A stretch of 64,000 nt of DNA, taken from the IMG/VR virus record IMGVR_UViG_3300037805_000644, positions 62,001 to 126,000 of that record; one strand, written 5' to 3'. A program made the translations under genes and the position numbers. Position 1 is the stretch's first letter; every line of letters starts with the position of its first letter. Shown piece by piece: positions 19,257-38,500 of this stretch. The notes below the pieces were generated by a model. It saw only the letters and a list, made by a program, of their open reading frames with translations. It had not been told where the DNA came from and ran no database searches.

Positions 19257-20687
19257 CTACAGGAAGAACAGGTTTGAGGCATCCTCAGCCGCAATTCCCT
19301 TGGGTTCTTGTATGCCAAGGCGGTCCACCTCGACATAATAGCTTTGCCCGGTCACCGACTCAGGCATTCGGCTATCCAGGCGCAGGATGCTGGGTGCCAC
19401 ACGCACTCCGGTCGCAGGGCCTGATGCAAACCCTACCCGCCCACCAGCAGCACCCAACACCGTCTTGAGACGATAGCTGCCTGCATTTGCCCCTGTGGCG
19501 AACGTCAGCACCTCCCCCTCAGCAGCAAGGGCCCAGTCTTGACTGGAGTCCGTGATGTCGTCCCCGCTCACTGTGGCGGACCCTGAGAGCCCTGTGGGGC
19601 TTGTGGTGTACGCCCTGGCGGTACTGTCGTCCCCCCCAGGGAACACGATGCGCTCCACCACTCGATAGCGACCCAGTTCCCGGCGGTCTGTCGAGGCCAC
19701 TGTCCCCTCTTGACCCCCGGCATGGATGCCGTTTGGTCCCGAGGTGACCACCAGAGGTGCGGCTGCCGAGATGTTGGAGAAGTCCCGGTTCACGTCCTGG
19801 AACAAGCTCCGATCTGACAGGGTCTCCCCTTGAGTGCCGGATACGCTCTTGGCGCCGTGGCAATAACGCCGGAAATCCTCGTAGTAATACGAGTGCATGT
19901 CCCAGCTCAGGGTCCCTGCAAACAGCTCACCGAAAGTCTCCGTGAATTGATGCCGGTACTCATACAGGGTGTGGGCCGGCTTCAAAGCCCTCATGACAAT
20001 TCGGACGTTCTCCATCAGGATGAAAGGATCCTCAGGGAACCGCTCCAGCCCTGACCCTGCATCGAGGTAATTTGCGCTGACCTCAAAGCAAAACTGATCG
20101 TCGAGCCCCCAAGCCGAACCTGAGCCCAGCTTCCGGGCCTCGACGGCTTTCTCCAACACCGTGTAAGCGATATCCTGAACCAGCCCGGGGTTCTCACACC
20201 TCGCCAACCCCTGGGTCGCCCTACCAACCTCAGCCAGGGACTCCTCAATGGTCCCCTTGGTTGCCCCCTGCAAGAGGAACCGGACCATGCTCTGGAGGAA
20301 CTGACGGTAAGTCAGGTCGCCCTGGAGGTCGGGGTATCCATCGGTCTGGGCATCCGGGAACACGAGCTGGCCCAGCATTTGGAACAGGAACTCCGACCGG
20401 GTGTAATCGTACATCGTATCCGCCCAGACCTCCTGAGCGGTGATCTGGAATTCTGCGATCTGTTCAGCGGCGGCCTGGAACTGGAGGGTGTAAAAGGGCC
20501 CCGTCACCTGCGAGATGTAGTTGCTCGGCAGGAGCTGGAGGAACACCTTCATGATGTTGTCCACCTGGTCTCGGACTTGCTGCTTGTGCTCCTGGGACCC
20601 TTGGGCTTTCTGATCCGTATGGACAGGGGCAGGGTTCTGGGCTACGAGCCCAGGGAGGAGGTTCTTGTTGACGGGCTTGTCTGCCAT
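19257..20687 (-). CDS. Baseplate wedge protein, P2 gpI-like (476 aa)
   Basis: Follows baseplate J once the GNAT-like insert is ignored. LLQLLPSNY at the N-terminus and RIVMRALKPAHTLY match the gpI-type KPAH motif. Confidence 0.7.
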   Translation of the reverse strand: MADKPVNKNLLPGLVAQNPAPVHTDQKAQGSQEHKQQVRDQVDNIMKVFLQLLPSNYISQVTGPFYTLQFQAAAEQIAEFQITAQEVWADTMYDYTRSEFLFQMLGQLVFPDAQTDGYPDLQGDLTYRQFLQSMVRFLLQGATKGTIEESLAEVGRATQGLARCENPGLVQDIAYTVLEKAVEARKLGSGSAWGLDDQFCFEVSANYLDAGSGLERFPEDPFILMENVRIVMRALKPAHTLYEYRHQFTETFGELFAGTLSWDMHSYYYEDFRRYCHGAKSVSGTQGETLSDRSLFQDVNRDFSNISAAAPLVVTSGPNGIHAGGQEGTVASTDRRELGRYRVVERIVFPGGDDSTARAYTTSPTGLSGSATVSGDDITDSSQDWALAAEGEVLTFATGANAGSYRLKTVLGAAGGRVGFASGPATGVRVAPSILRLDSRMPESVTGQSYYVEVDRLGIQEPKGIAAEDASNLFFL

Positions 20688-20699
20688 CAGTTACGCCCC
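20684..20699. repeat. 16-bp direct repeat CCATCAGTTACGCCCC, copy 1 (GNAT-like stop and gpI-like start junction)
   Basis: Exact match to 21253-21268. The minus strand reads GGGGCGTAACTGATGG (Gly-Arg-Asn-stop overlapping ATG). Confidence 0.95.
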
Positions 20700-21256
20700 C
20701 ACACCAAGAAACCCTCATGGGGGTACCTGCGGCGAATCGAGTTCCAAACCCTAAAGGCGGCAGGCTTAGTGGGCTCCCCTGCACATACCCCAGGCCCAAT
20801 AGCCGCTCGGTGCTTGGTGGCCATCTGAATGATCTCTGCATAAAACAGATTGCCCAGACCTCTCCGCCTCAGCTCAACATCCAGCATGGTGTGCCCGATG
20901 AACCAAAGGTTCTGGATCTGGGGGTGCTTTGAGGTCAGGGTATCGAAATCTGTGCGGCACTGGCTTGTGGTGTAGGACGCCCGCCGCCGGCGAGGCAGCG
21001 GGGGGATGCCAGACCTCACCTGCTCCATCGCATGATCGTCTTTCTCCTGGGAGGTCATATGCAGATCGGTAGCATACACCCACCCCACTGCCCGCCGACC
21101 CTCCAAAATCTTCACTACCCCTCCCTTGGGGGAGTCCTTGCGGAATACCTTGAAGTCCCGATCCAACTCCTCCGCAATCTGAGCAACTACCTGGTCAAGT
21201 TCCGCGCCCGCTTGGCGCTGCAACCACTGCCCCGCAACCCGTGTGACTGAATCCAT
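20687..21256 (-). CDS. GNAT-fold acetyltransferase-like protein (189 aa) with a short N-terminal leader
   Basis: HTMLDVELRRRGLGNLFYAEII matches GNAT motif A (R/Q-x-x-G-x-G). It is followed by TKPAAFRVWNSI, resembling the motif B helix. TGATG coupling occurs at both ends. Confidence 0.6.
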   Translation of the reverse strand: MDSVTRVAGQWLQRQAGAELDQVVAQIAEELDRDFKVFRKDSPKGGVVKILEGRRAVGWVYATDLHMTSQEKDDHAMEQVRSGIPPLPRRRRASYTTSQCRTDFDTLTSKHPQIQNLWFIGHTMLDVELRRRGLGNLFYAEIIQMATKHRAAIGPGVCAGEPTKPAAFRVWNSIRRRYPHEGFLVWGRN

Positions 21257-21268
21257 CAGTTACGCCCC
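21253..21268. repeat. 16-bp direct repeat CCATCAGTTACGCCCC, copy 2 (baseplate J stop and GNAT-like start junction)
   Basis: Exact match to 20684-20699. Confidence 0.95.
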
Positions 21269-24200
21269 TGTACCCGAGCCAAGAAATCGGTGTCCTCGTC
21301 AAAAGTGAGGTCGATCTCACCAATCTCCAGGTATTCCGTGGGACCCGGCTCAATGTTCTTGACTCCCGCATCACCCTGCACCTGGTAAGTCACCGTGTAC
21401 TGGTGATCCAGAGGGGTGTCGTCCTTGGTCAGGGACACCAAGATCCGGTTGGCTGTGATCTCCCGACGTTTCTCGATGATCTCCGCCCCGGAGGCAAACG
21501 GGTAAGCCGCCTGGAGGGTGGCGTCGTCAGAAAAACCGGGGATCTCCAAACCCTGGGCACCGATGATGAAGGCAGAACCGGACCCGTTGAGCATGGGCAC
21601 CCCGTTGATGTTCGGAGCGATCACCTTGTTCTCCAGCAGATCCTCATCTGCGAAAACGCCCCGGAACTTGGTCTCCTCACCACCACTGTCGATGGTGGAT
21701 GCCTCCAGGGGGTTCTTGAGCAACCACACGTTGACGGCACCTGAGGTGGCGTTCCAGGTATCCACAGCAAACACGTCTGAGGACTGGGTGGTTGTGATGA
21801 ACTCCCGCACCACCAGGGCACCGTCTCCCTTGGACATCTTGGTGAGGGGGACGACGGGGTAAGCTACGCCGGACACGTTCTCGATGACCCCAAGAACATC
21901 TGCCTGTCGGACGGGCTCCCCAAGCACCAGTGCGCCAAAGTAGCGGTCCAGAGCCGTTCGGATAGCCCCATCCACGGTGTCCACGGACACCCTGCGTTGG
22001 TTGGCATTCTCCAAGACCACTGTCACCGTGAGGTCCACGGGCACGTTGACCGCCTCCTTGGCGACCACATCAGCGGTGATGTGGCGATCCGGGTTAATGG
22101 CGCTCTCCGTCAGGGACACCAGCGCATTGGTGGTGTACAAAACGGTGAAGTTCTCATCGTACTTGTAGCTGATGAGCAAGGTCTGCCCCTCAGAGATCGG
22201 TGAGCCCGAGGTCACCTGGATACCCAGAGGGGTCGCGGAGTCGCCGGTGATGATGGTGTACTCAGGGGTCAGTGAGGCGAAGGGGCCAACGTAAGTCGTC
22301 GCCCCGGTCTCATCCGTGACGACCACAGAGTAAGGGTTGGCCCCGAGGCGGTTAACATACTCAACGCCATCCAGGATCACATGCTGCTCACCGGTCACCT
22401 CAATGGGCGTCCCACTCGGGATGGTATCCCCGGCATCCGTCAGGGGTTCCGTCACCTGAACATAGTCCCCAGCTTCGGTCGAGCGGCCCAGCTCCAACGG
22501 GTCGCTGGCCTGGTACAGGTCGAAGATATCTTCGTCCAGCTCACCGCTGACCTCTCCAGTCATGTCCCCCACAGAGCGGACAGGCTGCCTAGCAAAGGTG
22601 TGCTTGTTGCTTGTCCGGTAACGGTAACTGCCCTTGACCACGTCCAGCAGGCCCAGGATTGCGGGGTCATTGAGGGCGGTGTCAAGCTGGATGACGTTGT
22701 AAGCCACCACGGTGGTGTTGGTCAGGTCAAAGGTGGCGCCCTTGGTCTCGTTGACCAGCTCAATGTCGAACTCAGGGTAATCCAGCATCTCAATGATGGG
22801 GTTGTCCTCAGAGAGGCTGGGGTCAACGGCCCGGAGTCTGAGATCCTTGGGGTCCCCAACCGGCTCGAACTGCACGCCCGTCTTACTCTCAAAGGAGAAA
22901 GCAAAACTGTCCGTGACTGTGCTCAGGTTCTCCCCTCTCAGCCAGATATCCACCTTGCCGCCCACATGGCGCCCGCTCTCGTTGCGGTCTCGCTGCATGA
23001 GGGGGTGGCCGGCGTCCACCACATTGACCTGCTCGACCCCAGGGACATCCACGGCATTCTTCACGTAACCCCGGAGAGTGCCAGAGTCCACCGAAGACAG
23101 GGCGTTCATGCCCCGGGCTGCCAGGTCTCGGTTCGACTCCTCAGTCAAGCCGCCACTGATAGCCGAGTCGTTGGTGACCTCGACGCCCACGGGAGCACCC
23201 GAGACGGTGCCGTTCTGGCCTGGGGCCAGGTTGCTGCCCAGCCCCACGTCCTCAGCCTGCACGAAGGCTGTGGCAGAGTAACGGCCGGTGATCGGGTTGA
23301 AGAAAGAACCTGCACCTGAGCTGGTGATAGATACGGAGCTGGTGAGGCGGTAACCCACACCACCCAGCACCACCCTTGTGCCGATGCCGAAGCTGAGGCT
23401 CGTGGTCGGGCGGGAGCGGGTGTAGATGGTCACAGATCCTCGGGCTCGGCGACCACTCCGCCGTGTCTTCCCGTAGTTGCTCGCCAGCTTTTCAAAGGTG
23501 TTGTCAATGAGCTGCTGAACCGAGCTGGTGCTCTCCAAGAAGAACGCCTGCTTGAGTGCGATCTTGTAGTCCGACTGCTCAACCGGAATGGACACCCCAG
23601 ACAGGCTGGGGTCGTCGATGGGGAGCAACGTGGCGAAGCTGCCGGCGCGATGCAAGAAATCGATGATGAACCGCTGGCGCTCCGCCTCCGTGGAGAAGGG
23701 GTCAATGAATGTGTCCCGCAATACAGAGCCGGGCTTCACGTCAATCTGAGGCTGAGCCCGGAAAATGCTAAGCACCGTGTCACGCACGATATTCTGGCGG
23801 CTCACCGCAGGGAATGTACCGACGTTGGGGACCAACTCCAGAGGGGAACCCGACAGCTCGGGGCTAAACGCGGTCTCGTACTCGGTGCCCTCGGTGAAGT
23901 AAACCGCCGTCACCACATAGTAAACGGGATCTGACTTGGGGATGGCGTTGAAGGCCGCGTTTGGGATGGCCGGGTTGGTGGGTGAGTTGAAGCTCGCCAG
24001 CCGGTCGTGGACGAAGCTGTACCTAGAAAGGCTCCGCACTGCCTCCACCGAGATGGTTGAGCGGACTCGGGTGGTGTTGTCGGGGATCTCCAGAGCCTGA
24101 TCGAAATCAGTCTGGAGGACCGTGTCGTCCTGGTCCTCCTGGGTGGCCTTGTAGACCATGAATAGGGGGTCCGCCGCAGGGGAGCCGTCGTTGAGGGTGG

Positions 24201-24768
24201 CCACGTTGGCATCCACCGTCAGCTCCGCCAGGGTGGTCAAGTCCTCGATCTGCTCACCCGAGATAACCAGGGAGGGGTTGATGCGGGAATAGCCCTCAGC
24301 CCCACCACCGGGCTGGGTTGAGGCATAGAAGTTGTACCCGATGACCTCAGAGGCATCGAGACCATCCACAGTGACCTTAATGGCCTCGTTGAACCGCTCA
24401 AGGAACACGCCGGTGGGCTCGTCGAGGGACACTCCAAGGTCACTGTCCTGCACAAGCCGGGCAGTGATGCGGCTCGGCTTTGAGACCGTGCCGTTGGAAA
24501 AGACCGCCTTGACCTGGATGTCGTTATCTCCAGCCAAGAGCTGGATCCCGTCAGGGAAAGCAGAGGGGTTGGGCACCACGAAAGTCGTGCCCTCAAAAGC
24601 GATCAGGTCTGGATCGGAGGTGAAAGCCGCGCCACGGACAGACACCTGCATGTCCACCGTGTCCGCGTCCATCTCCCCTGAGAAGTGCCGGGAATCAATA
24701 GTAGTCGAGAAGGTGTAATCCTCTCGGAGGACTGCATCAGGACCCTCAAACTTGGGCAGGGTGGGCAT
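21256..24768 (-). CDS. Baseplate J-like wedge protein (1170 aa) with N-terminal Ig/FN3-like extension
   Basis: Classic J series: RARGSVTIYT...VQAEDVGLGSNL...VTNDSAISGGLTEESNRDL...GTLRGY...VPGVEQVNVV...GGKVDIWL. Confidence 0.9.
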   Translation of the reverse strand: MPTLPKFEGPDAVLREDYTFSTTIDSRHFSGEMDADTVDMQVSVRGAAFTSDPDLIAFEGTTFVVPNPSAFPDGIQLLAGDNDIQVKAVFSNGTVSKPSRITARLVQDSDLGVSLDEPTGVFLERFNEAIKVTVDGLDASEVIGYNFYASTQPGGGAEGYSRINPSLVISGEQIEDLTTLAELTVDANVATLNDGSPAADPLFMVYKATQEDQDDTVLQTDFDQALEIPDNTTRVRSTISVEAVRSLSRYSFVHDRLASFNSPTNPAIPNAAFNAIPKSDPVYYVVTAVYFTEGTEYETAFSPELSGSPLELVPNVGTFPAVSRQNIVRDTVLSIFRAQPQIDVKPGSVLRDTFIDPFSTEAERQRFIIDFLHRAGSFATLLPIDDPSLSGVSIPVEQSDYKIALKQAFFLESTSSVQQLIDNTFEKLASNYGKTRRSGRRARGSVTIYTRSRPTTSLSFGIGTRVVLGGVGYRLTSSVSITSSGAGSFFNPITGRYSATAFVQAEDVGLGSNLAPGQNGTVSGAPVGVEVTNDSAISGGLTEESNRDLAARGMNALSSVDSGTLRGYVKNAVDVPGVEQVNVVDAGHPLMQRDRNESGRHVGGKVDIWLRGENLSTVTDSFAFSFESKTGVQFEPVGDPKDLRLRAVDPSLSEDNPIIEMLDYPEFDIELVNETKGATFDLTNTTVVAYNVIQLDTALNDPAILGLLDVVKGSYRYRTSNKHTFARQPVRSVGDMTGEVSGELDEDIFDLYQASDPLELGRSTEAGDYVQVTEPLTDAGDTIPSGTPIEVTGEQHVILDGVEYVNRLGANPYSVVVTDETGATTYVGPFASLTPEYTIITGDSATPLGIQVTSGSPISEGQTLLISYKYDENFTVLYTTNALVSLTESAINPDRHITADVVAKEAVNVPVDLTVTVVLENANQRRVSVDTVDGAIRTALDRYFGALVLGEPVRQADVLGVIENVSGVAYPVVPLTKMSKGDGALVVREFITTTQSSDVFAVDTWNATSGAVNVWLLKNPLEASTIDSGGEETKFRGVFADEDLLENKVIAPNINGVPMLNGSGSAFIIGAQGLEIPGFSDDATLQAAYPFASGAEIIEKRREITANRILVSLTKDDTPLDHQYTVTYQVQGDAGVKNIEPGPTEYLEIGEIDLTFDEDTDFLARVQGRN

Positions 24769-25937: not shown

Positions 25938-25952
25938 CTGCGAATCGGGCAA

Positions 25953-25964
25953 CTTTCCGGGTAA
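25953..25964 (+). promoter_or_regulatory. Candidate regulatory motif CTTTCCGGGTAA (exact copy on minus strand at 59965-59976; core also at 61759-61766 and 28311-28318)
   Basis: Exact 12-mer shared between two intergenic gaps. 59969-59980 and 61759-61770 also share CCGGAAAGGTTC exactly. Confidence 0.4.
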
Positions 25965-26012
25965 CGATCTGACGGCAGGTGGTAGTTAGGGTGAGACACA
26001 AGGAGATCCAGC

Positions 26013-26276
26013 ATGTACCGAGACGTTGAGGGTGTGGCAGAAGACTGGGGAACACGCGGGAGTGGGACCCCCTCCAAGAGGATCGCCGACGGGGTGTTCC
26101 AGATGGTCACCGACGCAGGAGCGCCCAACCTCACCACGGTGGAGGTGGAGACCCCGGAGGATGCCCTGGTCCTCATCATCGAAGCGAAAGTGTTCGAGTT
26201 GAAGTACCCCTTCGACGATGACGACATCCAAGACAAGATCAACGCCTTCCTCGACGGTGAGCCCGGGGACCGCTAG
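26013..26276 (+). CDS. Small acidic hypothetical protein (87 aa)
   Basis: AAGGAG RBS, ATG start; its stop overlaps the next GTG start (TAGTG). Confidence 0.75.
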   Translation: MYRDVEGVAEDWGTRGSGTPSKRIADGVFQMVTDAGAPNLTTVEVETPEDALVLIIEAKVFELKYPFDDDDIQDKINAFLDGEPGDR

Positions 26277-26545
26277 TGGGTCTGCAAGGCCGGGTTGCAG
26301 GCATCTGCACAGGTTGCGGGTCCCGGCCCGGTGATCCTCCGATCACTTGGGGCGGGGGTGGTGTATTCTGTGCCTCCTGCGTGGACCTCTTTGGGGGAGC
26401 CGATCTAGCCAGACAGCGGCAAAAACAGAAGCGGGAAAAAGCCTTGAAATGGAGATCCGAAGGGCTCTCTTACCGCAAGATTGGAGATAAGCTGGGGATC
26501 AGCCTCCAAGCCGCCGCCCAGCTCATCAAGCGAGCTGGCGGGTAA
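26276..26545 (+). CDS. Zinc-finger plus helix-turn-helix protein (89 aa)
   Basis: CTGC...CASC pairs followed by RSEGLSYRKIGDKLGISLQAAAQLIKR, a sigma70-region-4 or homeodomain-like HTH. Confidence 0.75.
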   Translation: MGLQGRVAGICTGCGSRPGDPPITWGGGGVFCASCVDLFGGADLARQRQKQKREKALKWRSEGLSYRKIGDKLGISLQAAAQLIKRAGG

Positions 26546-26559
26546 CTGACAGGAGAACC

Positions 26560-26964
26560 ATGGATCGCCGTACCTTACGAGATAAAGACCCCGACATCAA
26601 AGATGCAGCCCTTGCGGCGGCACTGGGTCGGGATGCGGCTGTCCTTGCGGTCGGCCCACCCCCCCAGGCAAGCCAGGACATCCCTTGGGAGGACACGGCC
26701 CGGCTGACCGACAACTTCATCGGCACCCTCCGTGGGCTGTTTGGTTTTGTGGGCGTCAAGATGCTTACCGAGGGGGAGGGCGGTGACCTCCTCATTGATC
26801 GGGTTGAGGGGATGCTCCAGGAGGCTTACCTGCTTGGGGTGAAAGCAGCACAGAACACCCGGCTCGATTATGACATCGCCCAGAGCAAGGCATCTACCGC
26901 CGGGATCTTGAAGGGCCTTCTCGGCAACATAGGCGAGGATTCTGAGGATGACGGAAACGATTGA
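26560..26964 (+). CDS. Hypothetical protein (134 aa)
   Basis: AGGAG RBS, ATG start, operon-like spacing. Confidence 0.7.
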   Translation: MDRRTLRDKDPDIKDAALAAALGRDAAVLAVGPPPQASQDIPWEDTARLTDNFIGTLRGLFGFVGVKMLTEGEGGDLLIDRVEGMLQEAYLLGVKAAQNTRLDYDIAQSKASTAGILKGLLGNIGEDSEDDGND

Positions 26965-27190
26965 TCGGAAACTCAATCAGATGATCCCGGGTGCCCGCGT
27001 GTTTGCCCGGGGTGATGCGGATGACCTCGGAACTGTCGTGGCTGGCAAGCACGGGGAGCCCTGGGTTATCTGGGATTCGGGGGAGCATGATGCTCTCACG
27101 GGGTGTCAGTGTGACATCGGGTGCCAGTGCTTCGGGGACGTTCAGACTTCTTTCGGGATCAAGGTGATCCCAACCTCGGAGGACCCATGA
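26948..27190 (+). CDS. Hypothetical Cys-containing protein (80 aa)
   Basis: GAGG before ATG. It overlaps both neighbours and contains GCQCDIGCQC. Confidence 0.6.
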   Translation: MTETIDRKLNQMIPGARVFARGDADDLGTVVAGKHGEPWVIWDSGEHDALTGCQCDIGCQCFGDVQTSFGIKVIPTSEDP

Positions 27191-27348
27191 CCGAGGCTTG
27201 GACATTCGCGTGGGCCTGTGGGGGTTACATCTCCACGCTGTGCGCTGATTTCGACACCCTTTTCATGGAGCTTGTCGCGCAATACGGAGCACCCGATAGC
27301 GTGACAGCCAGCACCGCCGCTATGCCTCAAAACGTGACCAAGGGCTGA
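27187..27348 (+). CDS. Small hypothetical protein (53 aa; MTEAWTFAWACGG...)
   Basis: ATGA overlap with the upstream stop and GGAGG RBS favour 27187 over the track's 27121 start. Confidence 0.55.
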   Translation: MTEAWTFAWACGGYISTLCADFDTLFMELVAQYGAPDSVTASTAAMPQNVTKG

Positions 27349-27355
27349 TCAGCCC
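27342..27355. repeat. Perfect 14-bp palindrome GGGCTGATCAGCCC formed by two abutting convergent stop codons
   Basis: TGA at 27346-27348 (+) directly abuts TGA at 27351-27349 (-). Both are preceded by GGC Gly codons. Confidence 0.85.
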
Positions 27356-29125: not shown

Positions 29126-32100
29126 TCAAAGGACATCGGGCTCATCATCCGGTGGGGGATTGTTGGGGGCTTCCAGATTCTCCAAGCCAAACAGTGGCCC
29201 TGGGGATGTGACACTGGCGTCCTGTTTGGGGTCACTGTCTTGCCCCATTGCCACTTGCAGCAACTCGATCAGAAAAGTCGGAGCACCACCCGCCAACACC
29301 GCCACCCCTCCTCCATAGGCGGCAAGCTCACGCGCTTCATCGAGCATGGTCTGCGTGACGGGTGCGCCCACCGCGGGGTCAAGCGCGGCGGCCTGCTCGA
29401 CAGCGATGCGCTCCGCCTGCTCGCGCTTCCCTCCTCCATAGGCGAGGGGGCTGTCTGAGGGCTTGTTGTCCGCCGTGATGAACTGCCGGGTGATGTCGTC
29501 AGTGCCCTGGCCCACCAGCAGCAACCCCGAGCATTGGGGGATCCCCACGGTGAACCCAAGGATGCTCTGAATCAGGGAGTTCAACCTACGGATCAGGTTC
29601 TGCAACTCGACGATGCGGTCCTCCACGAACTCGATGTACTGGACAATGGCGTCCGTCACCGACTTGATGGACTCCGCCAAGGCATCAAGCCATTGCTGGA
29701 GGGTTTCAAAGAACCCGTCCAGAGCAGGGAAACTGTCGAGGAAACGGATAGCGATCCACTCCCCGTCTTGGGGGTGGCGGAGTCCCGCAGCAGCGGCCAC
29801 ACCCAACACCAAGGCCGACTGGGAGTACAAGAGGCCACCCTCCCACTCCCGGAACATGGTCCGCAGGTACCGGGCGCCGAACGCGTCCTGAACATTAACG
29901 GGGACCACCCCCGTTTGGGCTGCCGCCCTCATCTTGTCCGCCCCGAAATAGAACACTGGAGACAGGTCCGCCGAGCCGACTTTCCTCTCCTGGGCCGCCA
30001 AGGCGTCCATGTAGGACAGGACCTTGGTGGGCACCAGGATGGAGCCGTCTGCCTGGAGGTACTTCTCGTAAAACATGCGGAGGGAAGGTGGGGAGTCTGC
30101 AAGAACTTGGAGCGCCGAACTCGCTGGAATCTGGCCCTTCACCTCCCAGTCAGCCACGTCTGCCGGGGTGACCTCAATGAAGTCGCCTTTGCGGCCTCGA
30201 ATAACATCGGGGATCCCTGCCGACATCAGCTTGCCCACCAGGGCCTCAGGCACCTCCATGCTGTAAGGGTTGGGGGCGAAACCGATGCTTCGCCAGGCCC
30301 CGAGCTGGGGGGCTGGCTCTGTGGACAAGTTCGGGAACTCAGGGGGCTTATCCACTGAGGCCGCCAGATCGTTGTTCCGTTGCTTCAAAGCCAGCGTTTC
30401 AGTGTCCAGCTCAGTGCTCAGGGCAGCAAGCAGCAAGAAATCAGCAGAGGCATCGTTCATGCTGGGAAGGTCGGAGATCCGCCTCATCTCCTTAATGGCT
30501 CCGGTCTCCCCAACCCCGAGGAGCAAAGCCTGCACGCTGGCTTCGTTTCGCATCTCCAGAGTGTTCTGGGCGATGAACTCATGAAGCTCGGGACGGGCAC
30601 CAAGTTTGTCGCACAGCTCCTTGGCAAAACCCCGCACCCGGGTCAGCAGCTCCTGGCGGAACCTCTGTGGGTTTTGACCCTTGGTCTCGATGAACTGCTT
30701 GAACCCTCCGGGGAACATCTGCTCCAGAAGGCCCTTGTAAGGCTCCAAACCCGTGGCCAGGAGTGCCACCCCGGGGATGAGCTTCTTGTGCTCCTTAGCC
30801 AGCTCAATAGCCTCCTCTGGCCACCCCTCCACCTCGTCGATGAGGGGGAGATCGGAACGGCTCAGGACCAGCACCATCAGGGCAATCGACACAGCGTCGA
30901 GGAAATCTCCGGTGTTGGAGTTAGGGATGGTGGCCTTGAATGCGGGACTCCAGGCTGACCTCTTCGCCTGCCCCTTTTGGGGGATACGGAACAGCTCCCC
31001 CGGGTTGTTTCCCAGGTCCCGGACCTTAGAGAAATCCAGGGCATAACTCTTGCTGATCGTCCGATCTCCGAGTGGGGTCGCCAAGGTGTACTCTGCATTA
31101 TCGGTGGAGGCGATGCGGACATAGTAAGTGCTCAGCCGGCCGAGGTCCCGGACAGTGACCTGGCCGGTCAGGTTGTCCACTTTGAACTCAGCATCATGAG
31201 GCAGGTCATCGAAATTGAGGACCAGGCTGTACTCCTGCTTGACCCAGGCACTGATCTGCCCGGGGTCCACCGCAAAGGTCCGTTGGAGCAGGTAAGGGTT
31301 GTCGATGTCCTCACCCTCTCTGAGCAGATCGAGATCGATGACCTCCCCCGAGGCGCGGCTCTTCAACCCATAAACGGCGGTGTGGCCGTCCCGGAACTGG
31401 TTTGGCCCCTCAACAACACTGTTCCAGGAGTGCTCATCCAGGGGACCGTCAAGCATATCGGACCCACCGTACAGGATGTAAGGCTGACCCTTCCTGTCGA
31501 GGACCTTACCGGCCTCCCGTGAGGACCGGCGTGCCGTGTCACCACCCTCGGGCTCTCTCTTCTTGGCGTCGTTCTCGGGCCGGTTGAAGGCAAGGGGGAT
31601 CCCCTCCTCCCGTGTGCCGACGGTCACCAGGAATCCCTGAGGCCCCACCGGAGGGAACGGGTTGAACGGGCTCGTCAGGTTGGTCGGCTGGACTTTCCAG
31701 GTGATCTTCACCTTCTCAGGTGGGGTGTCCTCAAAACGCACCAGGTTCTCGAACGAGTCAAAAACATCACCGTTGGCCTGGGTCCCAAACTGGATCCCCG
31801 TGACGATGGGCACCGGGGGTGTGCCTGAGGGGTTGAAGCTCTGATTGAACAGGTCCAGGAGTTGTTCAACGAACTGCACCAGCCGGGAGATCCCACTGTA
31901 GTCTACCGAGAGATAAAAGAAAGCCCCGAGCACGGAGGCGTTGCCTGAGATGTCGGGTCGGGTGGGGTCGGTCTTGTCGGTGAGGCGGGCGATCATCCGC
32001 CGCTCGTACTCCGAGTAACCACCCCGGAGATCCTGATAGGGGCTCTCCAAGAGAGCCCAATCACCCGTGATGTAGATCCCCAAGTTTTGGAGATCTGCCA

Positions 32101-32314
32101 GCAAAGTGCTGACCTGGTCGATGATCGCCTGGACAAGGGCAGCAATGGGATCAAGGGACCCCACTGCAAAGGCTTTGAGGAGCTGGAGGGCGGACAAGGC
32201 GATGTCCAAAAACTCCAGCAAGAACTCTGCGACGCTGTTGATCGACTCCCGGGTGTCCTCCAGGAAATCAGGCAGCTCGAAACTGACTGTCCCCCACTCT
32301 CCGAAATCAGACAT
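29126..32314 (-). CDS. Large hypothetical virion-associated protein (1062 aa; MSDFGEW...) with amphipathic helical termini
   Basis: TGATG coupling to the upstream 78-aa gene and AGGAGG-like RBS support ATG 32314 rather than 32380. Confidence 0.75.
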   Translation of the reverse strand: MSDFGEWGTVSFELPDFLEDTRESINSVAEFLLEFLDIALSALQLLKAFAVGSLDPIAALVQAIIDQVSTLLADLQNLGIYITGDWALLESPYQDLRGGYSEYERRMIARLTDKTDPTRPDISGNASVLGAFFYLSVDYSGISRLVQFVEQLLDLFNQSFNPSGTPPVPIVTGIQFGTQANGDVFDSFENLVRFEDTPPEKVKITWKVQPTNLTSPFNPFPPVGPQGFLVTVGTREEGIPLAFNRPENDAKKREPEGGDTARRSSREAGKVLDRKGQPYILYGGSDMLDGPLDEHSWNSVVEGPNQFRDGHTAVYGLKSRASGEVIDLDLLREGEDIDNPYLLQRTFAVDPGQISAWVKQEYSLVLNFDDLPHDAEFKVDNLTGQVTVRDLGRLSTYYVRIASTDNAEYTLATPLGDRTISKSYALDFSKVRDLGNNPGELFRIPQKGQAKRSAWSPAFKATIPNSNTGDFLDAVSIALMVLVLSRSDLPLIDEVEGWPEEAIELAKEHKKLIPGVALLATGLEPYKGLLEQMFPGGFKQFIETKGQNPQRFRQELLTRVRGFAKELCDKLGARPELHEFIAQNTLEMRNEASVQALLLGVGETGAIKEMRRISDLPSMNDASADFLLLAALSTELDTETLALKQRNNDLAASVDKPPEFPNLSTEPAPQLGAWRSIGFAPNPYSMEVPEALVGKLMSAGIPDVIRGRKGDFIEVTPADVADWEVKGQIPASSALQVLADSPPSLRMFYEKYLQADGSILVPTKVLSYMDALAAQERKVGSADLSPVFYFGADKMRAAAQTGVVPVNVQDAFGARYLRTMFREWEGGLLYSQSALVLGVAAAAGLRHPQDGEWIAIRFLDSFPALDGFFETLQQWLDALAESIKSVTDAIVQYIEFVEDRIVELQNLIRRLNSLIQSILGFTVGIPQCSGLLLVGQGTDDITRQFITADNKPSDSPLAYGGGKREQAERIAVEQAAALDPAVGAPVTQTMLDEARELAAYGGGVAVLAGGAPTFLIELLQVAMGQDSDPKQDASVTSPGPLFGLENLEAPNNPPPDDEPDVL
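29306..29321. repeat. 16-bp direct repeat CCCTCCTCCATAGGCG, copy 1 (encodes AYGGG)
   Basis: Exact match to 29429-29444, 123 bp (41 codons) away. Confidence 0.9.
29429..29444. repeat. 16-bp direct repeat CCCTCCTCCATAGGCG, copy 2
   Basis: Exact match to 29306-29321. Confidence 0.9.
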
Positions 32315-32550
32315 CAGGAACCTCCACCGTGCTTGATGAGGGCGAGTTTCTGCAACGCCTCCGCCTTCTTGCCCTCCCACTCTGCAAGCTGCTGCTGGAG
32401 GATGCTCCGCATGGCCAACAGAGCCTGAGCCTGCTCATCGGCGAAAGCCGGGCGGATCTGCTTGTTGCTTCCGGCGGGAGACCAGGTGCCTACGTCTCTG
32501 CCGGTCTCGGCCAGCAACTCACCAGCTTCTTTGGGGGTCAAGGGCTTCAT
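32314..32550 (-). CDS. Small coiled-coil hypothetical protein (78 aa)
   Basis: ATGA overlap with the giant gene's stop and TGATG overlap with the next start. Confidence 0.75.
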   Translation of the reverse strand: MKPLTPKEAGELLAETGRDVGTWSPAGSNKQIRPAFADEQAQALLAMRSILQQQLAEWEGKKAEALQKLALIKHGGGS

Positions 32551-35500
32551 GCGTTCTCCGCTGCCTCTTCCAGGCGTGCTGCCCGCTCAGCCTCCGCCAG
32601 GCGCTTGGGCAGATCCTGGTCAAACAACTCAATGCGGCGCAAGGTGCCCTGAATTGTGTTGGTTCGGTAAGCCAACCAGGCATACCGAGCCGGGCGGAGC
32701 TGATCCTCAGTGTCCTGGATGATATCAACCCGCTCAGGCAGCACAGGGCGGACAGCCTCACCAGAGGTGTCCGAATATGCGGTGTAAGGGCCCCCCGCAA
32801 GCGGGAAGGCCGGGTCTGCACCCGAATCGAAGGTCCGGTAACCGATGTTGCTGTCAGGCACGAGCGAGTCCAGCCTCCGGTCGAGGATCCAGAACCGCCT
32901 GTCTAGGATCGACAGGCAGTCCGAGGTGTTCATGAACGGGGAGGTGTTGGTCTCTCCGATCAAGCTCTCCACGGTCACATTACCCAGGACCCCGAGGCCG
33001 TCGATGGGATCGCTGGGCGATCCAATGTCACGGCAGTGCTGTTCGTCCTGGAACACCCAGTAAGTGCCGGACTTGTTGCCACTCATGATGACCCTCAGCT
33101 CCTGAATCCAGGAAAGGATCCGCTCTCGGTTCATCAGCACCAGGTCCACCGCATCTTCTGAGAAGAGTTGGCTTGGTCGAATGATGCGGTAACCAAACGG
33201 GCGGATAGAGTGCGTGTCCCCCGTGTATGTGTCGGCACCCGCGATGTTCTCCCGCTTCTTGGTGGGCCGGAGGTCCATCTGACCCTCCCGGCTGTCCGGT
33301 GTGAGCACCGAGCCAGAAATGGTTGGCATGATGCTGTACCCCAAGGTCGCCTGAAATGTCGGGTCCTCGGGGAACACCACGTCAGAGGTCGCCCCACTGA
33401 TCCGGGCACCCGCCAAGGTGTTCAAGCCGTCTACCACCAGAACCGCAGGGCTCACGCTGTCGTCGATGTCAACGACCCTGTAAAACCCACGGTTGTCATC
33501 CAGGGAGTTGGGCTCCCCTGCGGAATGCCCTGCACGCTGCGGGCCCGAGGACAGGAAAGCGCCGATGTCCCCGATAGGTCGGGAGCCCCGCTCACCCGTC
33601 TGAGAGATCGTGGGGGTCGGATCTACAACCACGATGTCACCGCGCTGTACGCCCTTGCCACCCCAAGTACCCGGGTTGGCATCGTCCGACATGCGGTTGA
33701 CCACCGAGTCGTAGTCCACAGTGATCTGGTTGACATACCCGCCCGTCTCAGTGGCGTAGTCTGCTTTGGTCTCAGTGACCGTTTTGAAGGTCACCAGCTC
33801 CAGGAGCTGTTCATTGCTCTGCTCATGGGGGACAGGGGCCTGGCGAAGCCAGATCTCGAACCGCATCCCCGAGTTGGACTCCAGGGTCGCCTTGGGGGTC
33901 TGGAGCCCGGGGGCCTCCAACTTGACCTCCGAGGAAGAGGTCGCCCCGACAATGGCTACCTGCTCCAACAGGTTCCCGTCCTCATCCAAGAGGCGGAACA
34001 GATCACCGGCATTGATGTTCACATCGAGGTTATCGAATGGCCCCAGGTTGGTTCCGATGAGGCCCACCTCACCCGTGTTCCATACATCCGGTGCCAAGGG
34101 TGCTGCACCCCAGTCGTTATTGAAGTCCATGTCGAAGCCGTTGGCCTCCACAAGACCGAACTGCTTTGCCGTGGCGGTGTACTGGGTGATGCGCCCACGG
34201 CGGATCTCATAAGCGAAACGCAGCGGGGCGAACTGAGCTGAGATGTCGTCAAGCAGTCCGTGGAAGCGGCGGATGCGTCGAACCTCGAACTCCACCGGCT
34301 CGGGGGTCGTCACCGCAACACCACTGGTGTTGAAGGCGGCGAAGTCCCGGGCTCCGATGTTGGCGTAAGCTGCTGCACCTTGCTCTACGACATTGGCTTG
34401 GCCTGCGTCGTACTGCTCAACGGGGGTGGGGAAGCTAGGCTCCAGGAAGATACCCGCTTGTGCCCAGAACCCGCTGGTGGGCCCCACGGGGTCACCCAGG
34501 GTGACCTCTGTGTTCGGCAAGAGAGCCGCCACCCACTGGGGGGCCGCCGAGTGCCCATTGGGGTCATTCAGTGTGGCCCAGTCGGCATCGGGCACATTGG
34601 CGATGTTGATGGCGACGGGGACGTGGTCGTACACCACCGGATCCTCATCCGGGTTGTACAGGGTGTTGTTGATAGGGGTGCCTTCATCCACCTCAACCTG
34701 ACCGCCGCCACCAGGCACGGTAATCTCACCAGCGGTCGCATCGTACAGGACGGGGGCGCCGGGGCCTGCTGCACCCTCGAAATTGATCAGGCGGACCCCA
34801 TGGATCACCTCGGAGCCCAGGGTCAAGTCATGATGACCAACCACGGACCAGGAGTCTGGCAGGTCACCGCCACGAACACCCACCACCAGCGAGTCCAAGC
34901 CCGCCACCGGCAAGCCCACCCAGGGCTCCAAGTCCCCGAGGAGTGCGGGCGCTCCCGTGGCGTCCAGGAGGTTATTCAGGGTGAACGTGGTGAGCGTCAT
35001 GCCAGTTACGGCACCAGACCAGAACGCAGTGGCGTACTCCGCAGCCGTGGCGGCTGTGAGCTTGGACAGGTCACGGCAAATGAAGACCCGGTTACCCACA
35101 CCAGGGAACCCCGAGGTGCTGGTCACCGTCAGGGTGCTTCCGTCGAAACGCACCACCTCGGGGAACGTCTGCATGATCCAGCCGTTACCCCCACCCACCA
35201 CACAGGTTTGGGTGGTCTGGAGGGTGTGGCTCAGGGCATCATTCTCTGCAATGGCGTGCTTGACCAGGTAAGTCCCCGCCTTAGTGCAGGCATCATGCGC
35301 GGCGTCTCCTGACTTCTTGATGGTCAGGATGTCACCAGGTTCCACCTGCCCCACCAAACCGGCTGAAACCACCGGCTCGGTCACCCGGTCGTCCGACAAC
35401 AAGGCCACGGCGGCAGGGATGTCCCCATTGGCCTTGGACTCCATGAGCCCCGACCCTTGGCAGATGACACCCGAGGGCCCGTTAGGCGAAGAGGGGACAC

Positions 35501-38500
35501 CTGCAAACCGCACGTCGGTGCCGGGAAGGTTGACGTTCAGATGCCCCTCCAAGGCTACTGCCTTGAGGGATCCCCCTGCCGGAGAACTCCAAGCTCCGCT
35601 CGCCAGCTCATTGCCCACATCCGCTGCTGTGCGGCCGATGAACGTGAGGGGGTCACCGCCGTTGATGCGGTTGACTGAACTGGCGGTGTTCGGCGCACAG
35701 GTGACCTCCTCCACGAGGAGCCGTGTCTCCAGCACTGTGCCCGCTGCTTGCGGGTGGGTGCTACCCCTCTGGCGAGAAAGGCGGAAATCAAGAACCTCAT
35801 GGAAAGTCAAACGGTCCCCTGCAACATACGCGGTGTCACTCTCACCCCGAGGAGCAGCGTTGTTGTAAGTGTCCACATCCACAGAGAAATCGTAACTGTA
35901 AACCGTCTCCCGCTTGTACCCCGGCGCTGCCAGGTTGGTCTCCACGTAAGGCACGAACCATTGAGCCGGTGTAGGGCCGGGCCAGATGTGCCCGCCAATG
36001 CCGAAGCCTGTGATCACGATGTGCTTGTTCGCCGCTGGGCTACCCAGCGGTGCTGGGTCATTGGTGCCGAACTCGACATTGGTCACCACCACCGTGGTGG
36101 GCGCATTGCCGGACACCGTATCAGTGATGGTGACGTTGAGACCCTGGATTTCGATGCTGAACAGCTCGGTGCCCGGTGCCGCCATGGGGTTGGCACCCGG
36201 CGTATCCACCACACCGACATCATCCCGGGCCCAACACCGGAGGGTGATCCTGTTGTTGGCCTTGGAGCCGGCTGCGCCCCAGATGTCATTGAGGTTACCC
36301 GCAGCCGCCGCTACGCCGTCGTTGAGTGCAATCGAACCCAAGTCCACGAAAGAGAGGACTGTGGTGTCGAGGGCGGCATCACCGCTCTGGTCATATTCGT
36401 ACAGGCGAACCCCGCTCGGCTGATCCACCGTGGGGTCATTGCCCAGGTACCCATCCACATGAACCAGGGCGTTGTCAAGGACATACCGAACAGGGGAGCC
36501 TGTCGGGCCACCTGCAACTGCGGGTGCCGTTGTGGGGGTGATAAACCGAGGGGGCTCGATGAAGCCCACCCCGCCCGCTTCTTGTCGAACGGCACCCACA
36601 TTGAGGAGCCCCTGAGCACCTGCATTGATGCCACTCTGGCCACACTCCACCAGGAGGAGATCAAAGGGCTCAAGGCTTTCCTGACCAACCCCAACGGGGA
36701 ACGGGTCCTGGAGGGTCATGATAACCCCAGCCTCTTTGGTGGCTCCACCTGATCCAAAGGGATCACCCACATCCGAGAAATCGTGATTGATTCCATCGTG
36801 GGTGTCGATGACCTCCCCATCCAGGGCCACAATCTCGTCAGGGTAGGTGTACAGGCCCCCATTCTGAGAGAACACCCCGAACAGGTTGGACATCAGGGTG
36901 GGGTCCCCAAGGCGATCCAGTTCTGTGTTGCCAGTCCTCAGGTAAGGGATGCTGTAATCCCCGTCGTCGTCGGTGACCTGGCCCAGGAGGGCCGGGATCT
37001 CCAGCGGGAGGGGGTTGGCATACACGAACTCAACCGGGCCCTCGATGCCGCTCAGCGGGTCGGGAGCCTTCTGGCCGAAAATCTCTTTGAGCCCGTAAGG
37101 GTGCGGGTCATTGAAACTCGGGAGCGTCTGGTCTAGCACCCGGCCGTCAGGGCGGATGGAGAGGTCGAACCCATTGCGGTACACGTCGATGGAGCTGCCC
37201 ATCGCCCTCAGCTCACTGATGGTTGGGGGATCCGAGATCTCCACACCTTGCCCAAGAGACGGGATAACCAGGATGGTGTCCCCCTGGCTCAGCGGGAAAT
37301 CCTGGAGGGGGGTGCCGCTTGCGGCCCCTGTCCCGACCAGGATGCGGCTTGGATCATCCAACAGGGAGCCTTGGCTGTCCGCGAATCGAACGACGCAACC
37401 GTACTGCACATCAAGCACATGCAGGCTATCCAGCAAGGGGATGCCGAAAACCGTGAAGCTTTTCTGGCTGTGCGCCTGGTAAAGGCTTCCGTCAGGCTGG
37501 CCCCAGGAGAGTTGGTCACCGGGGGCAAAGCCCGGGAGGGCCAGCTCTGGGTCACCCGCCTCGGCATCCGCGATCTCCCCGCCCTGAGAACGGAGCTTGG
37601 ACACATCGACGAACCCGGTATCAGGGTGGACCGGAACCTCCGAGAGGGGGGTCTGCACCACGATCATGCAGGGTTCCAGGATAGCTGCGGGGGGCACCGC
37701 ACCGAACACATTGGCGGCCAAGCCGTCTGGGAAATAGCCCCAGACCCGGGCTCGGGCTCGCCGGGGGGTCAGGGCAGACTCGCTGATGTTGGTGATACCG
37801 CCCAACACGGGGTTGCTCACCGATGCGATCTCGGACTGGTTGGTGCTCTTCCGCTCTCCATCGACCGTGCGCCCCCAGGTGTAAGAGCCGGGATCCCCAG
37901 TGGCCTCGTCTGCCCCGATACCCGGGAAAGTCAAGAAAAATGCCTTGGCCTGGGTTGGGTAAATCCGGCTCAGGGCATGGCTGTCGGCCATCCGCTTGAA
38001 GTCGGCCAGGGCCTGGATCGAGAAAAACGGGGACACAGGTAGGAATTTGACGGTCGGGCGCTGCTTTGAGGTTACGACAAGGTCATCGACATCGTTGGTG
38101 ACCAAAACCGCCTGACGGGCGATGAGCTGCTGGAGTCGATCTGCGGTTGGGAACACCCCCGCCAGAACGCCACCCGCCAAGGTGGCCGAAGTGGGCTCCA
38201 CGAGAGGGTCCGCCTCCAAGAAAATGAGGTCATTGGCGGGGTTGGCCTCATTGACCACCATGCTCCACAGGTTCTTGGGCAGGAGGTGCCCTGAGATCTC
38301 ATCCTCATAGCCAGGCGTGGGCCACTCAAGCCCTTTGCCGATGAAGAAACGGAACTTGCCATCTCGGTCGCCAACGAATCGGCCGTCAATGGTCTCGTTG
38401 ATCTGCTCGAAAGCAACAATGGCCTGGTTGTAGAAATCAAGGAAAGTCCGGGAAGCCCGGTCCTTGTCCATCAGGTGTCGGCGCTCCCAGATGAGGCCCG

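What the first reader, a model, noticed from the sequence alone, without database searches (positions are those of the whole stretch)
29306..29444. Second 16-bp direct repeat flanks an in-frame 41-codon insertion
Seen: CCCTCCTCCATAGGCG at 29306-29321 and 29429-29444, giving ...PLAYGGG-KREQAERIAVEQAAALDPAVGAPVTQTMLDEARELA-AYGGG-VAVL. The codons are identical, including GGA GGA GGG, although this genome prefers C/G-ending Gly codons. Deleting 123 bp keeps the frame. The repeat length equals that around the GNAT-like gene. Inference: a recent duplication-flanked insertion. Two such events in 10 kb hint at a recombination pathway leaving ~16-bp duplications. The minus-strand repeat also reads CCTATGGAGGAGG, resembling the promoter motif plus a strong RBS.
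Basis: partly seen in the sequence, partly recalled or inferred. Interest (0 to 1): 0.6.

Follow-up and report, generated by a model that had tools for sequence, protein, structure and literature searches.

The report
Foreign gene fragment grafted into phage protein
A huge phage has copied about 110 bases from inside a gene of another phage in the same sample into one of its own conserved tail-module genes, in frame and flanked by an exact 16-base duplication of the target, so donor, recipient and empty site can all be compared.

Summary
The exact 16-mer occurs only twice in the window, at 29306-29321 and 29429-29444, inside a minus-strand gene (29126-32314, 1062 aa). That gene sits in the contractile-tail and baseplate module of a huge phage (223-kb partial record; relatives 400-536 kb).

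All 72 protein homologues and 74 related viral loci have one AYGGG-type motif with no 41-residue segment, and their codons vary. So this is a lineage-specific insertion with a target-site duplication.

I found the donor. The inserted piece matches 109 of 114 nt, in the same reading frame, the interior of an unrelated 160-aa gene. That gene belongs to a 67-68% GC, RecT-encoding phage-like element assembled from the same samples. Donor and target share at most 1-2 nt at the junctions, so the event was non-homologous.

The second 16-bp repeat (20684/21253) is also a true target duplication. A 553-nt GNAT-like orphan gene was inserted into the ancestral stop/start overlap between the Baseplate-J gene and the next gene.

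A genome-wide comparison with a 402-kb relative found no further such events. A third exact 16-mer pair elsewhere in the genome is not an insertion. The enzymology behind the 16-bp stagger is unresolved, and the read-level test could not be run.

The parts
29126..32314 (-). Recipient gene. It encodes a conserved 1062-aa protein of unknown fold in the tail and baseplate module (P0002; the ORF from the upstream GTG at 32380 is P0001).
   Evidence: ORF and translation. 74 homologues, E down to 1e-230. No Pfam or PHROGs family. No fold match in PDB or BFVD. Neighbours include a sheath-initiator-like protein and Baseplate_J.
29429..29444 (-). Copy A of the 16-bp target-site duplication (first AYGGG in reading direction).
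   Evidence: Exact repeat. The blastn alignment to the nearest relative L002 ends exactly at 29429.
29322..29428 (-). Captured foreign fragment, 107 nt between the repeats. The alignment to the donor runs 29319-29429. It encodes about 36 residues that are predicted to form a helical hairpin.
   Evidence: phmmer match to P0080 residues 56-93: 95% identity, E 4e-9 against 1.84e9 proteins. DNA match 109/114 nt with one 3-nt gap, E 2e-50. GC is 71% against 61% for the genome. AF2 places helices at 961-977 and 980-995 in P0002 numbering.
29306..29321 (-). Copy B of the 16-bp target-site duplication (second AYGGG). It leads straight into the conserved hydrophobic strand.
   Evidence: Exact repeat. 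All homologues have the motif once, directly followed by this strand.
21253..21268 (-). Second event, upstream copy of a 16-bp duplication. It carries the last codons and TGA stop of the Baseplate-J gene, overlapping the ATG now used by the inserted gene.
   Evidence: Relatives L012, L014, L031, L037 and L066 show the ancestral overlap: the Baseplate-J stop codon (TGA, or TAA in L066) overlapping the ATG of the next gene.
20700..21252 (-). Second event, 553-nt cargo. This is the body of a 189-aa GNAT-like orphan gene (ORF 20687-21256), which takes its ATG and its last three codons plus stop from the duplicated 16 nt.
   Evidence: only itself among 5.8e9 proteins. Phage-like GC1/2/3 of 0.62/0.46/0.70. 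GNAT leads: feature score 0.94, TM about 0.5. Absent from 80 related loci.
20684..20699 (-). Second event, downstream copy of the 16-bp duplication. It restores the stop/start overlap for the 476-aa gene.
21256..24768 (-). Baseplate J-like gene (1170 aa). Its 3' end is the target of the second event.
   Evidence: Pfam PF04865, E 7.4e-15.
19257..20687 (-). Conserved 476-aa gene downstream of the second insertion.
   Evidence: Homologues lie directly after Baseplate J in most relatives.

Best explanation
The 123-nt unit is a recent, lineage-specific, non-homologous insertion of foreign DNA. While the huge phage and a second, GC-rich, RecT-encoding phage-like element were in the same cell, about 107-113 nt from the interior of that element's 160-aa coiled-coil gene (P0080) were inserted into the most conserved C-terminal motif of a tail-module gene. 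The insertion duplicated 16 nt of the target. It survived because its total length is a multiple of three, the donor's own reading frame was kept, and the duplication rebuilt the AYGGG context on both sides. As a result the protein gains a protruding helical hairpin without losing either half of the motif.

Shown: the insertion, the empty site in relatives, the duplication, the donor sequence and its co-occurrence in the same samples, and the absence of flanking homology.

Inferred: the enzymology. My ranking is as follows.
- About 0.4: a break with 16-nt staggered ends was filled in and joined to a donor fragment with 0-2 nt of microhomology.
- About 0.3: replicative template switching onto the donor and back, re-entering 15-16 nt behind the exit point.
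- About 0.15: an integrase-type enzyme with a fixed 16-bp stagger.

The GNAT-like gene 8.7 kb away was inserted the same way, with the same duplication length, so one pathway probably made both.
For: - Exact 16-mer pair; none of 100 shuffles reproduced it.
- Identical rare codons, P about 1.4e-4.
- A single motif and no insert in 72 of 72 homologues and 74 of 74 viral loci.
- The alignment to the nearest relative breaks at 29429.
- The same allele appears in three contigs from JGI and ENA assemblies, two of them identical over 9189 bp.
- Donor: P0080 matches all 37 residues at 95% identity, E 4e-9 over 1.84e9 proteins. The DNA matches 109/114 nt, E 2e-50, in the same frame.
- The donor contigs are 67-68% GC. 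They carry HTH_3, DnaB, a C5 methylase, a RecT-like protein and a RecU-like resolvase.
- The donor contigs occur in JGI 3300037805 and ENA ERZ4231634, the same samples as the phage.
- The insert's GC of 71% fits the donor, not the 61% phage.
- Only these 114 nt are shared between the two replicons.
- Second event: the ancestral stop/start overlap is intact in most relatives and duplicated here.
Against: - No reads could be examined, so fixation, heteroplasmy and chimeric molecules are untested.
- Only 42% of the phage genome is on record, so an own-genome copy of the donor gene cannot be strictly excluded. Donor contigs do differ from the phage in GC and in coverage (94x against 10.7x).
- The insert differs from all 11 sampled donor copies by a 3-nt deletion and 1-2 substitutions, so the true donor allele is unsampled or the insert has since drifted.
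- No nuclease, integrase, Ku, RT or Cas1 that would explain a 16-nt stagger was found in the 223 kb.
- Two events are too few to show a fixed 16-bp rule. An unrelated exact 16-mer pair exists in the genome without any insertion.
Confidence: 0.85

Rival explanations
1. Replicative template switching (copy choice, MMBIR-like). A polymerase copying the phage gene left the template just after the 16 nt, copied about 110 nt of the co-resident donor genome, and returned 15-16 nt behind its exit point. No break or ligation is needed for this to create the duplication.
For: A donor template exists and is copied colinearly and in one piece. The junctions show minimal or imperfect microhomology: one shared G on the left, and GC.GC on the right if one later G-to-C change is allowed. 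No integrase or end-joining gene was found.
Against: Microhomology of 1-2 nt is barely above chance. Re-entry at the same 16-nt offset in two independent events is not expected from template switching. The alternative junction using the 4-nt CTCG microhomology present in both sequences was not used.
Confidence: 0.3
2. Enzyme-catalysed integration by a transposase or Cas1/casposase-like integrase, from the phage, the host or a third element. The enzyme attacks the two target strands 16 bp apart and joins whatever 3'-OH ends are at hand.
For: The two events have the same 16-bp duplication length but unrelated cargos of 107 and 553 nt. Casposases make 14-15-bp duplications and can integrate varied DNA in vitro (PMC6977970).
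Against: The cargos have no terminal inverted repeats, no shared end motifs and no second copy. Cas1, reverse transcriptase and Ku models found nothing in the 223 kb. The 16 bp does not equal the 14-15 bp described. No further events appeared at about 140 indel junctions.
Confidence: 0.15
3. An old protein-level repeat. The helix and both AYGGG motifs are ancestral and were lost in relatives by deletion between the repeats.
For: Direct repeats do promote deletions, and deleting 123 nt keeps the frame.
Against: All 146 relatives lack the segment, including the two nearest at about 70% nt identity. This would need many independent precise deletions. The two copies are identical at all synonymous sites. 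The segment is 96% identical to a foreign gene.
Confidence: 0.01
4. An assembly artefact or chimeric contig that joins phage and donor reads.
For: Donor and phage are in the same assemblies, and the donor is at higher coverage.
Against: A 16-nt repeat is shorter than assembler k-mers. The same junctions appear in separate JGI and ENA assemblies. The insert is in frame, is not identical to the donor (3-nt deletion, substitutions), and returns precisely to the target with a duplication. A chimera would not produce that.
Confidence: 0.03
5. A functional recoding or regulatory element. Either matched GGA take-off and landing codons allow ribosomes to bypass the 123 nt, as in T4 gene 60, or the repeat acts as an internal promoter or RBS.
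For: There are matched GGA GGA GGG codons at both ends, and an SD-like GGAGG lies in the repeat.
Against: There is no stop or rare codon after the take-off site and the segment is an open frame. The structure is no more stable than shuffles, z = 0.71. There is no Rfam match. The motif is not enriched convincingly.
Confidence: 0.02

Closest known systems
Filler-DNA or templated insertions at repaired breaks, and illegitimate recombination between co-infecting phages (the classical source of phage mosaicism)
   Same: A piece of another replicon is inserted without flanking homology. The junctions have 0-2 nt of microhomology, and the donor is a phage-like element in the same community.
   Different: This insertion lands inside a conserved structural gene, in frame and in the donor's own frame, with a clean 16-bp target duplication. 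A second event nearby has the same duplication length. I know of no described phage pathway with a 16-bp duplication (own knowledge; the literature search found none).
Rickettsia palindromic elements and other MITEs inserted in frame into ORFs (PMC10969869)
   Same: A short insert of about 100-150 bp adds a peptide segment to an otherwise conserved protein without breaking it.
   Different: RPEs are multi-copy, palindromic, self-defined elements. This insert is single-copy, is no more stably structured than shuffled sequence (z 0.71) and is a fragment of an ordinary protein-coding gene.
Casposon / Cas1-type integration (PMC6977970)
   Same: A long target-site duplication of a defined length, and tolerance of varied substrates in vitro.
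   Different: Casposase duplications are 14-15 bp, with terminal inverted repeats and a Cas1 gene. Here the duplication is 16 bp, there are no inverted repeats, and no Cas1 was found in the 223 kb.
Relaxed homologous recombination by phage single-strand annealing proteins (PMC3945230)
   Same: The donor element encodes a RecT-like annealing protein two genes from the donor gene. The exchange is between co-resident phages.
   Different: That pathway needs short, diverged homology on both sides. Here donor and target share no similarity beyond the insert, and such exchanges do not duplicate the target.
Moron or gene-cassette insertion at gene boundaries in phages
   Same: The GNAT-like gene sits between two conserved baseplate genes at a junction that carries unrelated small genes in several relatives.
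   Different: The gene has no promoter or terminator flanks of its own. It borrows its start codon and stop codon from a 16-bp duplication of the ancestral stop/start overlap.

Membership tests
Insertion with target-site duplication (generic) | Direct repeat of target sequence immediately flanking the insert | tested here: met
   Exact 16 nt on both sides.
Insertion with target-site duplication (generic) | Related genomes show the empty site with a single copy of the repeat | tested here: met
   72 proteins and 74 loci have one motif. L002 is the nearest empty site.
Transposable element / MITE / RPE | Terminal inverted repeats or palindromic structure | tested here: not met
   Fold z-score 0.71. 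No similarity between the insert ends by inspection.
Transposable element / MITE / RPE | Several copies in the genome or in related genomes | tested here: not met
   No second copy in the 223 kb, in IMG/VR by degenerate pattern or in GenBank phages. The only other copy is the donor gene itself.
Casposase / Cas1-type integration | 14-15-bp duplication, terminal inverted repeats, Cas1 homologue | tested here: not met
   The duplication is 16 bp, there are no inverted repeats, and PF01867 is absent from the 223 kb. Only 42% of the genome was sampled, so the absence of the gene is weak evidence.
Templated or filler-DNA insertion (non-homologous) | Insert is a colinear copy of a sequence that exists elsewhere | tested here: met
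   109/114 nt to the donor gene, E 2e-50.
Templated or filler-DNA insertion (non-homologous) | Little or no homology between donor flanks and target | tested here: met
   1 nt on the left and an imperfect GC.GC on the right. Nothing else is shared.
Homologous or SSAP-mediated mosaic exchange | Flanking similarity between donor and recipient on both sides of the exchanged piece | tested here: not met
   blastn and tblastx of the donor contigs against the phage genome: only the 114 nt match.
T4 gene 60-type translational bypass | Matched take-off and landing codons, with a stop codon and a stem-loop at take-off | tested here: not met
   The codons match, but AAG follows with no stop, and the structure is not significant.
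GNAT acetyltransferase (cargo of the second event) | GNAT fold and acetyl-CoA motif | tested here: inconclusive
   No Pfam hit. Language-model hits score 0.94 and structural hits TM 0.45-0.55 to GNAT clusters.

The most novel reading that the evidence does not exclude
This huge phage, or its host, has an undescribed DNA-capture activity. It cuts targets with a fixed 16-bp stagger and inserts arbitrary foreign fragments, from about 100 nt to a whole gene. That would create new protein segments and new genes in structural modules in one step, a phage analogue of exon shuffling.
Probability: 0.15. Interest if true: 0.75.

Novelty: new variant of a known kind. Interest (0 to 1): 0.55.

Why it matters
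Phage mosaicism is usually inferred from old, blurred joints. Here the recipient, the empty site, the donor gene and both junctions are all available at base resolution, and donor and recipient come from the same samples.

This shows that a fragment from inside an unrelated gene can be grafted, in frame, into the most conserved motif of a virion-module protein and persist. That is direct evidence for domain-fragment shuffling by non-homologous recombination in phages.

The insertion also links two uncultured viruses to the same host cell. The repeated 16-bp duplication, seen again where a whole orphan gene was inserted into a stop/start overlap, hints at a defined mechanism worth looking for in other huge phages.

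Tried and rejected
- **Reads:** No read-level test was made and I did not try another route.
- **Donor by DNA:** A degenerate codon pattern found nothing in viral, metagenome or genome contigs. An exact 20-mer gave 65 loci, all chance seeds extending at most 40 nt. GenBank phages gave E of 0.3 or worse. Only the exhaustive phmmer search with the 37-residue peptide found the donor.
- **Protein function:** Pfam and PHROGs are blank for the recipient protein. The AF2 model (pLDDT 78.5) has no match in PDB or BFVD, so its role is inferred from gene order only.
- **More events of the same kind:**
  - The 16-mer pair at genome 25632/26781 lies in a LamG-like protein whose homologue spans both ends, so it is not an insertion.
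  - The 13-mer pair at window 6343/6748 does not bound the 84-residue extra segment there.
  - The 15-mer pair at genome 132132/132291 could not be tested because homologues do not cover it.
  - About 140 indel junctions against the 402-kb relative gave no other flanking repeat longer than 13 nt.
- **Enzymes:** Cas1, RVT_1 and Ku models found nothing in the 223 kb.
- **Donor of the GNAT-like gene:** None was found by word search or IMG/VR scan.
- **Donor element in IMG/VR:** Not found.
- **RNA element:** No Rfam match and no unusually stable fold.
Full report
**Observation.** The 16-mer CCCTCCTCCATAGGCG occurs exactly twice in the 64-kb window, at 29306-29321 and 29429-29444. There are no further matches even with two mismatches, and none of 100 shuffles gave two matches. 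Both copies lie in one minus-strand ORF. The two copies encode AYGGG with the same five codons. In 17 long genes of the window GGA is 7.3% of Gly codons and TAT is 21% of Tyr codons. An independent second AYGGG would share all five codons with a probability of about 1.4e-4. The repeat therefore arose at the DNA level.

**Context.** The window is bases 62001-126000 of a 222,939-bp virus record that CheckV rates 42% complete.
- Collinear relatives are 402 kb and 436 kb (both with terminal repeats) and 536 kb. This is a clade of huge phages.
- The gene runs 29126-32314 (1062 aa from the ATG that matches the family consensus, P0002). It follows a 3755-aa ORF and a 78-aa ORF.
- Downstream lie 300-aa and 289-aa genes, a sheath-initiator (gp25-like) gene and a Baseplate_J gene. 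So it belongs to the contractile-tail and baseplate module.
- It has no Pfam or PHROGs family. An AlphaFold model built on 73 sequences (pLDDT 78.5, pTM 0.67) has no significant match in PDB or BFVD. What the protein does in the tail is not known.

**Is it an insertion?** Yes.
- The word search found 74 homologues and I aligned 72 of them. Every one has a single [AS][YF]G[AG]G motif directly followed by the hydrophobic strand, and none has the 41 residues.
- The same holds in 74 related viral loci read at the DNA level, where the motif codons vary freely.
- The nearest relatives, at about 70% nucleotide identity, are L002 and the 402-kb genome. The blastn alignment to L002 stops exactly at 29429.
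- The insert-bearing allele is present in three contigs from JGI and ENA assemblies. Two of them are identical over 9189 bp. No insert-less allele is on record in its 90% cluster.
- The insertion sits inside one of the most conserved stretches of the family (invariant K951, P952 and G1003 in P0002 numbering).
- In the model it forms a helical hairpin (helices 961-977 and 980-995, pLDDT 62-70). The hairpin lies between the conserved loop and strand 1000-1009, which is modelled with pLDDT 88.

**Where the insert came from.** The 107 nt between the repeats have 71% GC, against 61% for the genome, which puts them in the top 0.8% of 123-nt windows. They have no second copy in the 223 kb.
- DNA pattern scans and BLAST against public phages found nothing meaningful.
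- An exhaustive phmmer search with the 37-residue peptide (P0001:985-1021) against 1.84 billion representative proteins returned the phage's own protein and one other strong hit.
- That hit is P0080, a 160-aa helical protein. It matches all 37 residues at 95% identity (its residues 56-93, E 4e-9), and its flanks are unrelated to AYGGG.
- At the DNA level the donor gene matches window 29319-29429 at 109 of 114 nt with one 3-nt gap (E 2e-50), in the same reading frame.

**The donor element.**
- The donor gene lies in contigs of up to 18.4 kb with 67-68% GC.
- These contigs carry a Cro/CI-type HTH regulator, DnaB, a C5 methylase, a RecT-like annealing protein two genes downstream, and a RecU-like resolvase. 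This is a phage-like element.
- It is a replicon distinct from the huge phage. In one ENA assembly its coverage is 94x against 10.7x for the phage.
- It was assembled from the same samples as the phage: JGI 3300037805 (contig 002202 beside the phage's contig 000010) and ENA ERZ4231634.
- All 11 donor contigs are identical in this segment.
- Nothing else is shared between the donor contigs and the 223-kb phage.

**Direction of transfer.** Transfer was from the donor element to the phage, on four grounds. All phage relatives lack the segment. The duplication flanks it in the phage. Its GC fits the donor element. In P0080 it is continuous with the surrounding coiled coil.

**Junctions and age.**
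- On the left, target and donor share a single G before the junction.
- On the right, the donor continues GCG GCG CTC where the recipient reads GCC GCC TAT. So either the join is blunt and the duplication is exactly 16 nt, or it used a 2-nt GC microhomology followed by one later change.
- A 4-nt CTCG microhomology available in both sequences was not used.
- The insert differs from the sampled donor by a 3-nt deletion and one or two substitutions, about 2-3%. The two copies of the duplication are still identical, including all synonymous sites.
- The phage is about 30% diverged from its nearest relative, so the event is recent on that scale.

**The second 16-bp repeat.** CCATCAGTTACGCCCC at 20684 and 21253 flanks the 189-aa ORF.
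- In most relatives the Baseplate-J stop codon overlaps the ATG of the next conserved gene. The window's two copies, collapsed to one, give exactly that ancestral junction.
- The 553-nt cargo has no start or stop codon of its own. It uses the ATG and the last three codons plus TGA supplied by the duplicated 16 nt.
- The ORF shows phage-like codon-position GC. It is an orphan in the word search and in IMG/VR. Language-model and structural leads make it GNAT-like.
- The same junction carries unrelated small genes or 100-800 nt of other sequence in several relatives, including a 131-aa gene in L002. It is therefore a hotspot.

**Is there a general 16-bp pathway?** Non-tandem exact repeats of 16 nt or more within 2 kb number four in the genome, against 0.275 expected.
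- One is a 22-nt intergenic promoter/RBS-like motif.
- One, at genome 25632/26781, lies at the two ends of a LamG-like protein whose homologue in a 536-kb relative spans both ends. It is not an insertion.
- I compared the whole 223 kb with the collinear 402-kb relative and tested about 140 indel junctions in both genomes, plus all gaps inside the alignments. The only long flanking repeat was the GNAT event. This scan cannot see the 123-nt event because the sequence around it is too diverged.
- So two events, 8.7 kb apart and both with 16 bp, are all there is. This is suggestive of a common mechanism but far from proof.
- Cas1, reverse-transcriptase and Ku models find nothing in the sampled 42% of the genome.

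**Mechanism.**
- Shown: a non-homologous insertion of donor DNA with duplication of 16 target bases.
- Inferred: how it happened. I favour a 16-nt staggered break that was filled in and joined to a donor fragment (about 0.4). Next comes template switching to the donor and back (about 0.3), then an integrase-type reaction with a fixed stagger (about 0.15).
- Casposases, the nearest enzymatic analogue, give 14-15 bp and need inverted-repeat ends (PMC6977970).
- Annealing-protein-driven relaxed recombination (PMC3945230) needs flanking homology, which is absent here. The RecT-like gene beside the donor gene is still worth noting.
- In-frame palindromic elements of Rickettsia (PMC10969869) resemble the outcome but not the nature of the insert. 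This insert is single-copy, folds no more stably than shuffled sequence (z 0.71) and derives from an ordinary gene.
- A gene-60-type bypass, an RNA element and a promoter role are not supported.

**Limits.**
- No alternative genetic code was used, and no contig was taken for human.
- The host, the full phage genome and the function of both proteins remain unknown.

Noticed in passing
window 25945-27352: A block of about 1.4 kb with five small ORFs on the opposite strand (one weakly HTH_23-like) lies between the 289-aa gene and the gp25-like gene. L002 has only 188 nt there and L042 has 1.9 kb of other sequence. No flanking direct or inverted repeat of 11 nt or more was found.
   Followed up: partly
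window 20684-21268 and loci L002, L007, L008, L025, L042, L048, L083: The junction between Baseplate J and the next gene is an insertion hotspot. Most relatives keep a TGA/ATG overlap, while others carry unrelated inserts of 100-800 nt. L002 has an unrelated 131-aa gene whose downstream junction looks like a decayed copy of the upstream one.
   Followed up: partly
genome 25632-25647 and 26781-26796 (L005 2632 and 3781): An exact 16-mer encoding DNEAG lies near both ends of a 415-aa LamG-like protein, 383 codons apart. A homologue in a 536-kb relative covers both ends, so this is not an insertion. Chance or a micro-conversion could explain it.
   Followed up: yes
genome 132132-132146 and 132291-132305 (L006): An exact 15-mer encoding YKVMG occurs twice, 53 codons apart and in frame, in a 904-aa helicase with helicase-associated domains. 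The flanks are unrelated. This could be a third in-frame insertion of the same style, but homologues do not cover the region.
   Followed up: partly
genome 39960-39981 and 40923-40944: A 22-nt exact intergenic repeat, with extended similarity upstream, sits just before two start codons and contains GGAGG. It is a likely shared promoter/RBS cassette.
   Followed up: no
window 29126-29200 and alignment A1: Almost all members of the recipient protein family end in the same C-terminal motif (..EPDVL). This suggests a conserved docking or processing signal. The whole family has no detectable fold relatives.
   Followed up: no
window 5082-9014 (residues 787-870 of the 1310-aa protein): An 84-residue segment is absent from the homologue in the 402-kb relative. 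A 13-nt exact repeat nearby (window 6343/6748) does not bound it. An extra repeated domain is a likely explanation.
   Followed up: partly
window 32547-43814: A 3755-aa ORF lies directly upstream in the tail module and has no Pfam family. Its position suggests a very long tape-measure-like protein.
   Followed up: no
genome 43842-44013: A perfect tandem array of a 12-nt unit (about 13 copies) lies outside the window. Several other short in-frame tandem arrays occur at genome 7537-7650, 49698-49760 and 181764-181820.
   Followed up: no
L161 7105-8803 (donor element): The donor gene P0080 (160 aa, helical, no family) lies between a Cro/CI-like regulator and a RecT-like gene. It may belong to the element's recombination module.
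   Followed up: no
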